Part shown: positions 28,369-32,051 of the stretch, piece after piece
How the letters are laid out: every line of letters starts with the position of its first letter
How positions within the stretch are numbered: position 1 is the first letter of the stretch
Assembly (NCBI GenBank): GCA_964199315.1
Contig: OZ116700.1
Location: 9,300,001 to 9,364,000 of the forward strand
Length of the DNA: 64,000 nt
Reading direction: 5' to 3'
Origin: Orbicella franksi
Taxonomy: Eukaryota
Translations under genes and position numbers: made by a program
The notes under the pieces: generated by a model
What the model was told of the DNA's origin: nothing
Database searches by the model: none
Seen by the model: the letters and a program-made list of their open reading frames with translations, nothing else

Positions 28369-28923
28369 ATGAGGGGAGAACAGCTTTTACGAAAGGCGAT
28401 ATCAGAATGCAAAGAATACCATTTACCTGAATCGGTGACAAATCCTTTCGAAAACCACGATTTAAAATTTGCGTGGCTTGATAAGTCAATATCTTGGTTG
28501 CCTTTCCAAGCAACAGCTACATCGATAAAGCAAACAAACAACGGTTCTTTGAAAAGCGAGTTCAACAAAGTTGGCAAAGGCGCGAGACCAGTGCTACAAA
28601 GAAATGACTCGGTGAAAAAATTAATAGCGTCCAAAACACAGGGGATACGACGCTCCTTCTCGGAGAGCTTTAAGCACAGAACTGTAGTGACAGGCTGCAG
28701 CACAAACAGTACAGCGAGGGAGGAAATCATCGAAGAAGAACGTCTTGCAGCTGTGTTTGTAAGCGGCGATGAGTACATCTACAATCCGTGCGCGCCAAAC
28801 AAGCGACGAAAAGCAATTTGCGATCAGATCGAAAAGTGCATCTTGCAAAAGGGTGCGACGTTGAGGTCTTTGAGAAGGGACCTTATAGTTGCGGTCAATT
28901 TAACGAACTGGCATCTTCTTTAG
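28369..28923 (+). CDS. Intronless uncharacterised protein A, 184 aa from the first ATG
   Basis: 555-nt ORF in AT-rich DNA with aagATGa start and tandem CCAAT motifs ~50 bp upstream. The last 39 aa align without gaps to ORF 31506-32051. Confidence 0.7.
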   Translation: MRGEQLLRKAISECKEYHLPESVTNPFENHDLKFAWLDKSISWLPFQATATSIKQTNNGSLKSEFNKVGKGARPVLQRNDSVKKLIASKTQGIRRSFSESFKHRTVVTGCSTNSTAREEIIEEERLAAVFVSGDEYIYNPCAPNKRRKAICDQIEKCILQKGATLRSLRRDLIVAVNLTNWHLL

Positions 28924-31505
28924 AAGGAGCAGGCGCGTGCAACAATAATGCAAAAATGCTATGGCGTGGATACTGAGTAAATGATGATACGGTTTGAAGC
29001 TTTACATGTAAATGAAGGGGCGATCCATATACATGCATATACTCTGGGTGGACAAAACTAAGCGTACAAACATTGGATAAAGAGATCTTTCTTTTCTCTC
29101 AAAGACACTCGCTTGCCGCTCTCACATAAAATATGCGCCTTTTATCAAAACGGCAACAAACTGAGTCCGTTGGCGAAGCATTGTGGACAGCGCGCCTTTG
29201 CTCCACGAGGAGCCTAAAGGTATATCAAGTAAGTATCAAAACGGTCGAAATGTCAAGACTTCGCGCCAAAAGTAAACGGCAGCATTATGGGATACATCAG
29301 TGGCTTTTATATATTTTGTTGCTAAAAGTTGGACTTTGCACTGAGATGAGTTCCATTCAATGACATCATAGATGGATTTAGATAACGTGTTGTTGCCAGC
29401 CGATTTAGGTCATGTGATGATACATATGGGAGGTTACAATTGTCCTGTTTGTACATACTCCAATGCAATCAGTTGCGTGTGGCAATTTGTACAATTGTAA
29501 GGTCGAATCCGTCTATTGACTGAAAAATGTAAGGACGCAGTTATTCATTTATATTATTGTAAATTTGTATGAATATAATTATAGGTTTCACATTTAGTTT
29601 CTACTTTGCATCTATTTTGAGATCTTTTTGTTCCATAATATTTTTTCGAAAAATATAACTTCGTTAGTAGATTGATTGAGGCCTAGCCAAACGCTCGCCA
29701 AGCCAAGACAGTATAAAACAATCCGTATACCACGCGCGAAAAAAGGCGAACTGTTGCGCAGTCCTAAACGTTGTTCCGGAGAATACTTGAGAATATTGAG
29801 ATTGGTCCGATGTTTGAAGCACTGTAGCCCTTCGCTATCTCAAGTTCAAGTCGACGAGTAGAAATTCCTCAGATTGGCAAATTGGACTCGGCCCACGGAA
29901 ATTACTAAGCTTTCATTCTATTTGGTTAGTTACACTCAGTATACAAATTTTTCCTTTGCATATTGATGCTCTAGTTGAAAACATTGTGCAACCATGACGT
30001 CTGCAGCTAATGTGTAGTTTGACGAACTACACCGCAATGTTACTGTACCTTAATTACCTATGTAAAAGAACAAAGGAAACGATTAAAGAACTAGCCAAGT
30101 TATCGCCCCGTTTGTAGTGTAAATCATGCTGTAGAAACTAAAATAAGACATAACAGAAGCATATCACCCTGATAAGCTTCTGGATATAATAATATAGTAA
30201 CATGTAATAAGCTAGCTAACTGAGTCTTCCGAGTCTGTCTCTTTTACAGACGCTTTGGTTAGAGTACAAGGTCAGTAAAGGGTTGGGAAATTACAGAACG
30301 TGATATTTGAAGCGCCGCCGGGACGACTGTTCCCTGTCTCCCTATGTCCCCTCCCCTTAGGAAACTCTACAAGGGATTGAGACTTCCTACAACTGTACTC
30401 TGTAAGAAACAAATGAGAAATAAAAGGGTTCAAAAATGATGTTTGATACGAAGATAATTCGCATTGAACGAAAGGGGAAGTGGACAAACGGTTTGCGCGC
30501 TCACACAGGTTCGAGCTCTGGTCAGGGGGCCATTGTGTGCTCGAACAAGACAACTAAATTGCGTTCACGGTGTCTTCCCCCTCCCTCCCCTCCCAAAGTG
30601 TTCAAATGGACACAGCCGCCATAGCTTTTGAAAATCGTCAAGGAGAAAACCCTGGGGACGAGGTGGCCCCTTTTAGGATTCGACCGGGAGGTCCATCGTC
30701 TTCTCCGCCACGAGTTTCAAAATGACTGCTCGTCGGGGGAGACGCCCCGTGAAAAAAATCTGGGTCAACCCGGTGGAAAATCTTCCAAAAAGTAGACATT
30801 TGTATCACGTCACCGAAAGAGAAGAAAATGGCGGCTGGAGTCGACTTCAAATCCACCTTTAACAGGACCACGTGACTGAAAATTGCCAAAAAAGATCACA
30901 AAAGCGCGCTAAAAACACATGGAAAGACTCCAAGGTTTGAAACAAATTGATAGAATTTCAAATCCATGCAGACTGTCTTGTATCGCGCTTTGCTTATCTG
31001 TGCGTGAAATGTGTTGACGCTTATTCCTGTCTGCAAACGAACCCCTGTGATGAAATGAGTAGTTAGTTCTAATAGCGCGCACACACTGGCAAACTTGACT
31101 GATAGCTATTCAGTCTTGTGGTGATTAAAATGCTTTTAGGCAATCAGCTTTTCATTTGAATTAATGCAGCAGATGATATCAAAACTTTTCAAATAGCATT
31201 TTCATTCATTTTACTCGCTTTATTCATTGCAAGTCGACCGCGGATATTTCAACGAGCCGACCACGAACTGTTCAATAAATTAGGAAAAAAAGCGTCTTGT
31301 TGTCGCAGCGTGACAAGTGGGAGATTTCGAAGTAATTTACACCGACCATTGTCTTCCTTGTAATTAGTTTTAATAATGACTATGTCACAGGGCGAATGCG
31401 AACAACTTGTAAATTCTGAACACTGGTTAGACGAATGGAAGTCAAGACGAAGTCGGAGGACCCAGAAAATTCACTCATGAATACTTGAAATGTTTTCATA
31501 AAACT

Positions 31506-32051
31506 ATGGATAGAGGCATTCAATCTCGAGGAGAAAAACACCCTGACCTTAAACCTCGAAACTGTACTTCAGTGAAGGGGAGACAAGACGAGAGATCGGA
31601 GACTTCATCTTATGTCGTTAACAGCGAAAAATCGAGTAACGACTTGACTGAGAGAGTGGCACCATCTTCTTTCATACCGGCTAATCAAAGAAGAAAACTG
31701 TTTAACGGGAGCCTTAAGCTGTCAAAAACCAGATGGGTAAGTATGAGTCACGAAAAACCGTCTAGGAAAAACAGAGTTTTGAAGACGGAAAAGTCCCTGG
31801 ATGACGCTGCGTTTTTAAAGGAAAAGCGAGGAGGTTCGCATTATTGCGAAAGCTCTTCTGCGATTCAAGAAAGTCCAGAATTGGATACCTTGCCCGAAGA
31901 GATTTGTCTCGAGGCGTACTCTGAGACGCCACGAAGGGGAAGCATTTGTGAAGAGCTCGAAAAGGAGATCTTTCAGGGAGGAATCAGCTTGCACAAGATG
32001 CGCAAGGCAATGGTGATACAGGAAACACTTAAGGATAGATTTCTGATATGA
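31506..32051 (+). CDS. Intronless uncharacterised protein B, 181 aa from the first ATG
   Basis: 546-nt ORF with actATGg start and a Ser/Lys/Arg/Glu-rich N-terminal region. C-terminal RRGSICEELEKEIFQGG... is homologous to protein A. Confidence 0.7.
   Translation: MDRGIQSRGEKHPDLKPRNCTSVKGRQDERSETSSYVVNSEKSSNDLTERVAPSSFIPANQRRKLFNGSLKLSKTRWVSMSHEKPSRKNRVLKTEKSLDDAAFLKEKRGGSHYCESSSAIQESPELDTLPEEICLEAYSETPRRGSICEELEKEIFQGGISLHKMRKAMVIQETLKDRFLI

What the first reader, a model, noticed from the sequence alone, without database searches (positions are those of the whole stretch)
28369..32051. Two intronless orphan proteins share a gapless 39-residue C-terminal domain
Seen: A ends RRKAICDQIEKCILQKGATLRSLRRDLIVAVNLTNWHLL* and B ends RRGSICEELEKEIFQGGISLHKMRKAMVIQETLKDRFLI*. 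They align with no gaps to the stop codon, 13/39 identical, with conserved hydrophobic spacing. The proteins are 184 and 181 aa, same strand, ~2.6 kb apart, with no evident N-terminal similarity. Established: RRxS is a PKA consensus, present in B. Inference: an unannotated, anciently duplicated family of largely disordered proteins with a conserved RRxxIC-helix module, possibly a phospho-regulated docking domain.
Basis: partly seen in the sequence, partly recalled or inferred. Interest (0 to 1): 0.7.

Follow-up and report, generated by a model that had tools for sequence, protein, structure and literature searches.

The report
Coral protein family sharing C-terminal module
Two neighbouring coral genes encode small, mostly disordered proteins from a previously undescribed family found in corals, sea anemones and an octocoral, united only by a strongly conserved 40-residue tail whose first eight residues resemble the site that blocks protein kinase A.

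Summary
ORF A (28369-28923) and ORF B (31506-32051) end in a gapless 39-residue match, 13/39 identical. It is the best non-repeat pair among 35,511 ORF-tail pairs in the window; no shuffle out of 200,000 reaches its score.

Both are real genes. Each has about 26 full-length homologues in other corals. dN/dS is 0.22-0.29 overall and 0.04-0.15 in the tail. The A-then-B tandem order recurs in two other corals.

The pair belongs to something larger. A profile of the tail finds 108 protein clusters, nearly all carrying it at the extreme C-terminus. Every named member is anthozoan (Oculina, Stylophora, Nematostella, Exaiptasia, Actinostola, Paramuricea). None has a Pfam, PDB or fold match.

AlphaFold2 models the tail with pLDDT 96-97: an extended RR segment, a short helix, a tight Gly turn and a long helix. 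The rest is disordered.

The invariant core, RR-x-[A/G/S]-[I/V]-C-[D/E]-E, mirrors the PKA inhibitor site. It has the Ala/Gly/Ser P-site trio of RI-alpha, RI-beta and RII, and the P+2 Cys of RII. My proposal (about 0.3, inferred) is a pseudo-substrate (A) or substrate (B) docking module for a PKA-type kinase.

The parts
28283..28289 (+). TATA-like box (TATAAAT) about 86 nt upstream of the ATG of gene A, inside a roughly 110-bp block conserved in three corals; putative core promoter
   Evidence: the block, including ATATAAAT, is nearly invariant between the window, L003 and Oculina L006. Promoter function is inferred.
28369..28923 (+). Gene A coding sequence, 184 aa plus stop, uninterrupted
   Evidence: 26 homologues at 98-39% identity, full length; dN/dS 0.22-0.29; in-frame stop just upstream of the conserved MRGE start
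28768..28920 (+). C-terminal module of A (51 aa): acidic-aromatic lead-in (Tyr at P-13 and P-11), RRKAIC, short helix, Gly turn, long helix ending at the C-terminus.
   Evidence: AF2 pLDDT 96-97; dN/dS 0.07-0.15
31098..31505 (+). Conserved non-coding region upstream of gene B; putative promoter and 5' UTR, including a conserved CGTCTTGTTGTCGCAGCG element
   Evidence: 86% mean column identity among three corals, higher than in the CDS; the element is also present in L012; one Logan contig (L004) starts inside it. Function is inferred.
31506..32051 (+). Gene B coding sequence, 181 aa plus stop, uninterrupted
   Evidence: 26 homologues at 100-44% identity; the Oculina orthologue is an NCBI model (LOC144658701) whose 564-bp span equals 187 codons plus stop; dN/dS 0.23-0.24
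31896..32048 (+). C-terminal module of B (51 aa) with RRGSIC (Ser at the P-site). The 39-aa core is 31932-32048.
   Evidence: AF2 helices 147-157 and 162-179; dN/dS 0.04-0.11
32324..32347 (+). Cluster of polyadenylation-signal hexamers (ATTAAA, AATAAA, AATAAA) at the 3' edge of the block conserved with other corals; likely 3' end of the gene B transcript
   Evidence: inferred, with no read evidence

Best explanation
Shown (confidence at least 0.95): A and B are two real, tandemly arranged paralogous genes with uninterrupted coding regions. They encode proteins of about 180 aa that are mostly disordered. They belong to a family, seen so far only in anthozoans, that has no Pfam, PDB or fold match. 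A C-terminal module of 40-50 residues, ending at the last residue, defines the family. The module has four parts: an extended segment R-R-x-[A/G/S]-[I/V]-C-[D/E]-E, a short helix, a tight Gly turn, and a long amphipathic helix. The N-terminal regions have diverged beyond recognition while the module is under strong purifying selection.

Inferred (about 0.3): the module is a docking element for the catalytic cleft of a basophilic kinase of the PKA type. The RR pair would sit at P-3/P-2, and the small residue at the phospho-acceptor site. Ala there would make A, and most of the family, pseudo-substrates. Ser there would make B a true substrate, as in RII. The Ile/Val would fill the P+1 pocket. 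The near-invariant Cys would lie at P+2, as Cys97 of RII does next to Cys199 of the kinase. The helical hairpin would add affinity or carry a second function; a PKI-like nuclear export signal is one possibility. On this reading the family are PKI-like kinase buffers or localisers, and the A-to-B split switched one copy from inhibitor to phosphorylatable substrate.
For: Real genes: full-length conservation in more than 25 homologues each; dN/dS 0.22-0.29 overall and 0.04-0.15 in the module; A-then-B synteny between the Ig/collagen gene and AGXT in three corals; conserved upstream blocks with a TATA box.

Family: a 51-column profile finds 108 clusters at E <= 1e-3 among 1.84 billion representatives, nearly all with the match at the extreme C-terminus. 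All nine named clusters are anthozoan. A second tandem pair exists in Oculina.

Structure: AF2 with the 82-sequence alignment gives pLDDT 96-97 for the module and below 70 elsewhere.

Kinase idea: column counts in 82 diverse members are RR 82/82; P-site A 65, G 9, S 7; P+1 I 55, V 19, T 8; P+2 C 81/82; P+3 D/E 77; P+4 E 63. Published pseudo-substrate hallmarks are Arg at P-3 and P-2, Ala at the P-site, a hydrophobic P+1 and an upstream aromatic, and Ala-to-Ser converts inhibitor to substrate (10.1101/2021.07.05.451193). RI-alpha has Ala, RI-beta Gly and RII Ser at the P-site, and RII Cys97 can disulfide-bond to Cys199 of the catalytic subunit (PMC10532679). RII segments RRVSVCAE and RRASVCAE lie in the PKA-C cleft in PDB entries 2qvs and 3idb (PMC10401967). 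The A family has conserved Tyr at P-11 and Tyr/Phe at P-13.
Against: No binding, phosphorylation or expression data exist. The kinase idea rests on an eight-residue resemblance noticed after the fact. There is no sequence homology to PKI or to R subunits (no Pfam hit). The upstream aromatic or helix that gives PKI its high affinity is not conserved across the family, and AF2 predicts no helix there. P+3 is acidic here but Ala in R subunits. Thr at P+1 in 8 of 82 members is a poorer fit. Invariant E and R inside the helices, and small residues before a helix, could be purely structural. The NES-like pattern is only modestly enriched (66/82 against 44/82 in shuffled tails). One Oculina genome copy of A reads QRKAIC.
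Confidence: 0.3

Rival explanations
1. The module is a self-contained helical mini-domain (helix, Gly turn, helix) that binds a non-kinase partner or dimerises. The invariant RR, E and R would make structural salt bridges or contact that partner. The resemblance to the PKA inhibitor site would then be coincidence.
For: AF2 models the 35-40 residues as a compact unit with pLDDT 96-97. Invariant residues are spread through both helices (E at +10, L, R, L), not only in the RR segment. The segment upstream of RR is not conserved family-wide.
Against: No fold or sequence relative was found that could suggest a partner. This reading does not explain why the residue after RR-x is restricted to A/G/S, followed by a beta-branched hydrophobic and a near-invariant Cys, in a segment that AF2 leaves outside the helix.
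Confidence: 0.3
2. The tail is mainly a trafficking or turnover signal. Either it is a CRM1 nuclear export signal in the last helix, or a D-box-like RxxL degron (the invariant R and L; A reads R-R-D-L-I-V-A-V-N). The disordered N-terminus would then carry the real activity.
For: A class-1 NES spacing occurs in the last 18 residues of 66 of 82 members against a mean of 44 of 82 in shuffled tails. Invariant R followed by L/I/M three residues later is seen in 77 of 82. A matches RxxLxxxxN exactly.
Against: The NES regex is permissive: 54% of shuffles also match. The RxxL lies inside a confidently predicted helix, whereas D-boxes bind in extended form (established knowledge). The Asn at position +8 is present in only 13 of 82. 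Neither signal explains the invariant RR...C...E segment.
Confidence: 0.12
3. The match is chance, or the ORFs are non-coding (repeat- or transposon-derived).
For: For an unrestricted six-frame all-against-all comparison of the window, the 39-aa match alone would have an E-value of roughly 0.2, extrapolated.
Against: It is the top non-repeat tail pair by a wide margin. Profile-profile E is 1e-7. There are dozens of full-length orthologues, dN/dS is well below 1, synteny is conserved, there are only two copies in the window, and no transposon domains were found.
Confidence: 0.01

Closest known systems
PKI (heat-stable cAMP-dependent protein kinase inhibitor, Pfam PF02827)
   Same: A small, largely disordered protein. 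It has an RR-x-Ala-Ile pseudo-substrate core (PKI: RRNAI; A: RRKAI), an aromatic residue 11 positions upstream (Phe10 in PKI, from my own knowledge; Tyr in the A family), and a hydrophobic helix downstream that fits the class-1a NES spacing.
   Different: No detectable sequence homology (no Pfam hit). The module is at the extreme C-terminus rather than near the N-terminus. It has a near-invariant Cys at P+2 and acidic P+3/P+4. A folded helix-turn-helix follows immediately. The proteins are 2-8 times longer. Inhibition is untested.
Inhibitor site of PKA regulatory subunits (RI-alpha RRGAISAE, RII-alpha RRVSVCAE, RII-beta RRASVCAE)
   Same: Agreement at seven of eight positions in a relaxed sense: RR, the A/G/S alternation at the P-site across paralogues, Ile/Val at P+1, Cys at P+2 (RII) and Glu at P+4.
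   Different: No cyclic-nucleotide-binding or dimerisation/docking domains (no Pfam hits). P+3 is Asp/Glu instead of Ala. The surrounding context is entirely different, so at most this is convergent mimicry and not family membership.
SMO 'PKI motif' (decoy substrate in Smoothened's cytoplasmic tail)
   Same: It is a precedent for a short RR-x-A-I pseudo-substrate embedded in an unrelated disordered tail, recognised first from sequence hallmarks and then validated experimentally (10.1101/2021.07.05.451193).
   Different: SMO is a membrane receptor whose motif is internal and binds weakly. Here the motif heads a conserved C-terminal folded module in soluble small proteins.

Membership tests
PKA pseudo-substrate / substrate-type inhibitor motif (PKI, R-subunit inhibitor site, SMO PKI motif) | Arg at P-3 and P-2 | tested here: met
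   RR in 82 of 82 diverse family members and in all A and B orthologues that retain the tail. One Oculina genome copy reads QR.
PKA pseudo-substrate / substrate-type inhibitor motif (PKI, R-subunit inhibitor site, SMO PKI motif) | Non-phosphorylatable small residue (Ala or Gly) at the P-site for pseudo-substrates; Ser for RII-type substrates | tested here: met
   A 65, G 9, S 7, C 1 of 82. A has Ala and B has Ser.
PKA pseudo-substrate / substrate-type inhibitor motif (PKI, R-subunit inhibitor site, SMO PKI motif) | Hydrophobic residue at P+1 | tested here: met
   I 55, V 19, T 8 of 82
PKA pseudo-substrate / substrate-type inhibitor motif (PKI, R-subunit inhibitor site, SMO PKI motif) | Upstream aromatic residue (P-11 to P-13) on an amphipathic helix, giving high affinity | tested here: inconclusive
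   The A family has Tyr at P-11 and Tyr/Phe at P-13; the B family has Leu at P-11 and Ile/Phe at P-13. These positions are not conserved family-wide, and AF2 predicts no confident helix there.
PKA pseudo-substrate / substrate-type inhibitor motif (PKI, R-subunit inhibitor site, SMO PKI motif) | ATP-dependent binding to, and inhibition of, the PKA catalytic subunit | not testable with these tools
   Needs biochemistry or complex prediction. Structure prediction takes single unaltered chains only.
PKI protein family (Pfam PF02827) / PKA regulatory subunits (cNMP-binding plus RIIa domains) | Sequence homology to the family profile | tested here: not met
   No such Pfam hit in A, B, their 52 homologues or 102 wider members, even at E <= 10
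CRM1-dependent class-1 nuclear export signal | Spacing of four hydrophobic positions (classes 1a-1d) in an accessible helix | tested here: inconclusive
   66 of 82 tails match against a mean of 44 of 82 for shuffled tails, maximum 53. The pattern is permissive and is confounded with helix packing.
AKNA domain (Pfam PF12443) | Score above the Pfam gathering threshold; recurrence across the family | tested here: not met
   14 bits against a cut-off of 28.1 for B; best E 0.011 in 11 of 27 closely related B members; absent from the listed recurrent families among the 102 wider members
APC/C D-box degron (RxxLxxxxN) | R, L and N at fixed spacing in an extended, accessible segment | tested here: inconclusive
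   R in 82 of 82; L/I/M at +3 in 77 of 82; but the N-position column has N in only 13 of 82, and the segment is a confidently predicted helix
Transposon or virus-derived ORFs | Transposase, RT or capsid domains; multi-copy; non-syntenic | tested here: not met
   No such domains; two copies in the window; conserved synteny in three corals

The most novel reading that the evidence does not exclude
Anthozoans carry a previously undescribed, multi-paralogue family of PKI-like regulators of PKA or a related basophilic kinase. Their C-terminal module would combine an R-subunit-like inhibitor sequence with a folded helical hairpin. That sequence has the Ala/Gly/Ser P-site alternation and an RII-like P+2 Cys that could cross-link to Cys199 of the kinase under oxidation. 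Gene duplication, as in the A/B pair here, would then have repeatedly toggled members between pseudo-substrate inhibitor and phosphorylatable substrate.
Probability: 0.25. Interest if true: 0.75.

Novelty: new variant of a known kind. Interest (0 to 1): 0.5.

Why it matters
If the module does target PKA-type kinases, corals and sea anemones would have a lineage-specific, expanded set of kinase buffers with no sequence counterpart in bilaterians. That would bear on cAMP signalling in calcification, symbiosis and stress responses. It would also be a natural example of paralogues switching between inhibitor and substrate through a single P-site change.

Even without that, the result gives a concrete definition to more than 100 clusters of 'hypothetical' anthozoan proteins. 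It supplies a searchable profile, a confidently predicted mini-fold, and invariant residues to mutate. It also shows how disordered proteins can keep one short functional module while the rest diverges beyond recognition.

Tried and rejected
(1) Pfam on A, B, all 52 homologues and 102 wider members gave nothing significant or recurrent. The AKNA lead (B only, 14 bits) did not recur in the wider family.

(2) ESM Atlas feature searches on A, B and the tail alone scored at most 0.75. The leads (INKA1, MACIR, KRAP_IP3R_bind, polycystin) were inconsistent and were dropped.

(3) A PDB sequence search with the module profile had a best E of 0.03 over 18 residues of polyomavirus large T, treated as chance.

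(4) Fold searches of the AF2 model against PDB (Foldseek and VIA wide), AFDB clusters and the Atlas gave nothing above noise. The best was Z 2.3.

(5) Secreted peptide precursor with a dibasic cleavage site was rejected because neither N-terminus looks like a signal peptide; this is my reading of the sequences, with no predictor run.

(6) Exon shuffling of the module was not supported. In Nematostella and in the Oculina 606-aa member, the module shares one large exon with almost the whole protein.

(7) N-terminal homology between A and B was not detected (hhalign probability 0.1%).

The Logan contigs are collinear with the genome and have no poly(A) tail, so they could be DNA or RNA. TARA contigs are metagenomic DNA. 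Run accessions and locus names are absent from the paper library.

(9) The search of earlier findings by words returned nothing relevant.
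Full report
**1. Observation**

The window comes from a coral genome, according to earlier notes on the same window. That is consistent with all the homologues found here.

ORF A (28369-28923, 184 aa) and ORF B (31506-32051, 181 aa) lie on the + strand, with 2,582 bp between A's stop and B's ATG. BLASTP aligns only their last 39 residues: 13 identical, 25 positive, no gaps, running to the stop codon, pairwise E = 5e-7.

Against all six frames of the window, each protein finds the other at E about 7e-4. 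The next hit is at 0.7.

An unrestricted all-against-all comparison of the window would weaken that figure, so I tested the claim directly. The gapless score of the two tails is 69. None of 200,000 shuffles reaches it (maximum 33, z = 7.7). Among 35,511 pairs of tails of ORFs of at least 60 codons, every higher score is a DNA repeat, and the next unrelated pair scores 28. Only 15 ORFs of at least 130 aa exist in the window.

**2. Both are real, conserved genes**

Each protein has 26 homologues in the 5.8-billion-protein collection. They are aligned over the full length, at 98-39% identity for A and 100-44% for B. None has a Pfam domain. The only name is 'uncharacterized protein LOC144658701 [Oculina patagonica]', for a B orthologue.

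Longer variants in the B alignment are gene-caller artefacts that read the TGA stop as Trp.

Nei-Gojobori dN/dS against two other corals and two metagenome contigs is as follows:

| Gene | Overall | N-terminal part | Module |
|---|---|---|---|
| A | 0.22-0.29 for pairs with dS below 1 | 0.26-0.50 | 0.07-0.15 |
| B | 0.23-0.24 | 0.25-0.37 | 0.04-0.11 |

The order Ig/collagen gene, A, B, AGXT is kept in an ENA coral assembly (L003) and on an Oculina patagonica chromosome (L006).

The NCBI model of the Oculina B orthologue spans exactly 187 codons plus stop, so it is a single coding exon. The A orthologue there is an intact ORF but is not among the called genes.

Upstream of A there is a block of about 110 bp conserved in three corals, with a TATA box at 28283. 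Upstream of B, about 400 bp (31098-31505) are 86% identical among three corals, which is more than the CDS. A cluster of poly(A) signals at 32324-32347 marks the end of the conserved block.

**3. Expression was not tested**

Logan contigs that carry the genes are collinear with the genome and have no poly(A) tail, so they may be DNA or RNA. The case for real genes therefore rests on evolutionary constraint, not on reads.

**4. The pair belongs to a large family**

Profile-profile comparison of the A and B orthologue alignments gives 94% probability, E = 1e-7, over the last 52 columns or so. The N-terminal parts give nothing (probability 0.1%).

A 51-column profile built from both families (A4) was run against 1.84 billion cluster representatives. 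It found 108 clusters at E <= 1e-3 and 12 at E <= 1e-10. In nearly all of them the match ends at the last residue, in proteins of 50-625 aa.

All named members are anthozoan:
- Oculina patagonica
- Stylophora pistillata (LOC111338805)
- Nematostella vectensis (LOC5500903 / A7T1I8)
- Exaiptasia diaphana (KXJ19338.1)
- Actinostola sp. (KAK3710128.1)
- the octocoral Paramuricea clavata

No Pfam family recurs in the 102 wider members. The sub-threshold AKNA hit seen in B orthologues does not recur among them and is rejected.

In a tree of the module, A and B fall in different subclades, each with closer relatives than each other. That tree rests on a short alignment and its resolution is low. Still, the duplication appears to be old even though the two genes remain adjacent.

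Oculina has a second tandem pair: a 606-aa member followed 3.9 kb downstream by a member of about 140 aa. The Nematostella member and the Oculina 606-aa member each encode the module on the same large exon as nearly the whole protein. Tandem duplication followed by fast divergence of the disordered part explains the pattern better than exon shuffling. The window itself holds only the two copies.

**5. Anatomy of the module**

Column counts in 82 diverse members:

| Position | Residues |
|---|---|
| P-3, P-2 | RR 82/82 |
| P-1 | any residue |
| P-site | A 65, G 9, S 7 |
| P+1 | I 55, V 19, T 8 |
| P+2 | C 81/82 |
| P+3 | D/E 77 |
| P+4 | E 63 |
| next | I/L/M |
| next | E 82/82 |
| next | K/R |
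| turn | G 72 |
| next | S/T |
| next | L 81 |
| long helix | R 82/82, then L/I/M, V/I, V/I, three variable residues, then L 79 |
| end | L-L |

AlphaFold2 with only the B orthologues gave two helices with pLDDT up to 86 in an otherwise disordered chain.

With the 82-sequence alignment, the last 35-40 residues of A reach pLDDT 96-97. The model has an extended RRKAIC segment, a short helix (108-113), a tight hairpin turn at the Gly, and a long helix (121-136). Everything upstream stays below 70.

No solved or predicted structure matches it. For a 40-residue element attached to a disordered chain, that is weak evidence either way.

**6. Mechanism**

This much is shown: the module is strongly constrained, is always C-terminal, is probably folded or folds on binding, and sits on variable disordered proteins.

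The rest is inferred. The eight invariant or near-invariant residues at its start read like the inhibitor site of PKA regulators.

Published hallmarks of a PKA-C pseudo-substrate are Arg at P-3 and P-2, Ala at the P-site, a hydrophobic P+1 and an upstream aromatic. Changing the P-site Ala to Ser converts an inhibitor into a substrate (10.1101/2021.07.05.451193). RI-alpha carries Ala, RI-beta Gly and RII Ser at the P-site. Cys97 of RII, at P+2, can disulfide-bond to Cys199 of the catalytic subunit (PMC10532679). The RII segments RRVSVCAE and RRASVCAE are seen in the PKA-C cleft in 2qvs and 3idb (PMC10401967).

The family shows the same RR, the same A/G/S alternation, I/V at P+1, Cys at P+2 and Glu at P+4. 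A (RRKAIC) would be a pseudo-substrate and B (RRGSIC) a substrate. A orthologues also keep Tyr at P-11, the position of Phe10 in PKI (my own knowledge), and Tyr/Phe at P-13.

The last helix fits class-1 NES spacing in 66 of 82 members, against 44 of 82 in shuffled tails. That would echo PKI's pseudo-substrate-plus-NES layout, but the pattern is permissive.

I put about 0.3 on 'docks into the cleft of a PKA-type or other RR-x-S/T-hydrophobic kinase'. The reasons for caution:
- The resemblance is short and was noticed after the fact.
- There is no homology to PKI or to R subunits.
- The upstream determinants are not conserved family-wide.
- P+3 differs from R subunits.
- The invariant E and R inside the helices could be structural.

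The rivals are a non-kinase partner-binding or dimerising mini-domain (about 0.3), a trafficking or degron signal (about 0.12), and chance or non-coding sequence (about 0.01). The remaining probability is for mechanisms I have not thought of.

**7. Comparison and novelty**

The family is not a member of PKI, of the R subunits, of AKNA or of any Pfam family tested. At most it works like a PKI or R-subunit inhibitor site. As an uncharacterised protein family seen so far only in anthozoans it is new, and no paper in the library mentions its locus names. Lineage-restricted families of disordered proteins are common, though, so the interest lies in the sharply defined module and the testable kinase hypothesis.

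I rate it a new variant of a known kind (pseudo-substrate or SLiM-type docking modules), with interest 0.5. That would rise to about 0.75 if the PKA link is confirmed.

**8.

Three corrections apply:
- The pair is part of a family found across the anthozoans sampled, so these are not two orphans.
- The usual P-site residue is Ala, not Ser.
- 'Intronless' is shown only for the coding region.

Noticed in passing
window 58176-60641 (-): An uninterrupted 821-aa ORF with TPR repeats and two arginine-methyltransferase-type modules (PRMT_C E = 1.4e-19; PrmA; PRMT5_C). It looks like an intronless PRMT9-like gene.
   Followed up: partly
window about 34.6-44.3 kb and 48.6-55.2 kb (-): Exons of the Oculina AGXT (Aminotran_5) gene hit the window twice in parallel series. 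This suggests two tandem AGXT copies downstream of gene B.
   Followed up: no
window 31098-31505: The non-coding region upstream of gene B is more conserved among three corals (86% column identity) than the coding sequence. It contains an invariant CGTCTTGTTGTCGCAGCG element that is also present in a fourth species (L012). One Logan contig (L004) starts inside it, and it may mark the transcription start site.
   Followed up: partly
L006:6891-7433 (Oculina patagonica CM126640.1): The A orthologue is an intact 180-aa ORF but is not among the genes called for the NCBI record. Its motif reads QRKAIC, whereas a near-identical Logan protein (P0010) has RRKAIC. This could be a polymorphism, an assembly error or a real loss of the P-3 Arg.
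   Followed up: no
L011:8389-10194 and 13736-14188 (Oculina patagonica CM126639.1): A second tandem pair of family members: a 606-aa protein and, 3.9 kb downstream on the same strand, an ORF of about 140 aa ending in the same module. The called gene there is listed as an 87-aa spliced product, so the model may be wrong.
   Followed up: partly
window about 14492 (+), 33761 (+), 33737 (-): Three ORF tails share a repeat-derived peptide (core [13 protein letters not shown]), which indicates copies of an interspersed repeat. One sits about 1.7 kb downstream of gene B.
   Followed up: no
window 28326-28778 (-): A 150-aa antisense ORF overlaps gene A. It has no Pfam hit and is most likely a by-product of the codon composition of the sense gene.
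   Followed up: partly
P0027, P0028, P0031, P0034, P0043, P0011, P0024 (Logan/ENA gene calls): Several database versions of A and B run past the true stop with W at the TGA. The gene caller evidently used a genetic code that reads TGA as Trp on coral contigs, which inflates the protein lengths.
   Followed up: yes
L013:1-22: The Logan contig that carries a B-like gene starts with Illumina adapter sequence directly followed by the 5' leader, 172 nt before the ATG. It may mark a cDNA or fragment end, and is weak circumstantial evidence for a transcript start.
   Followed up: no
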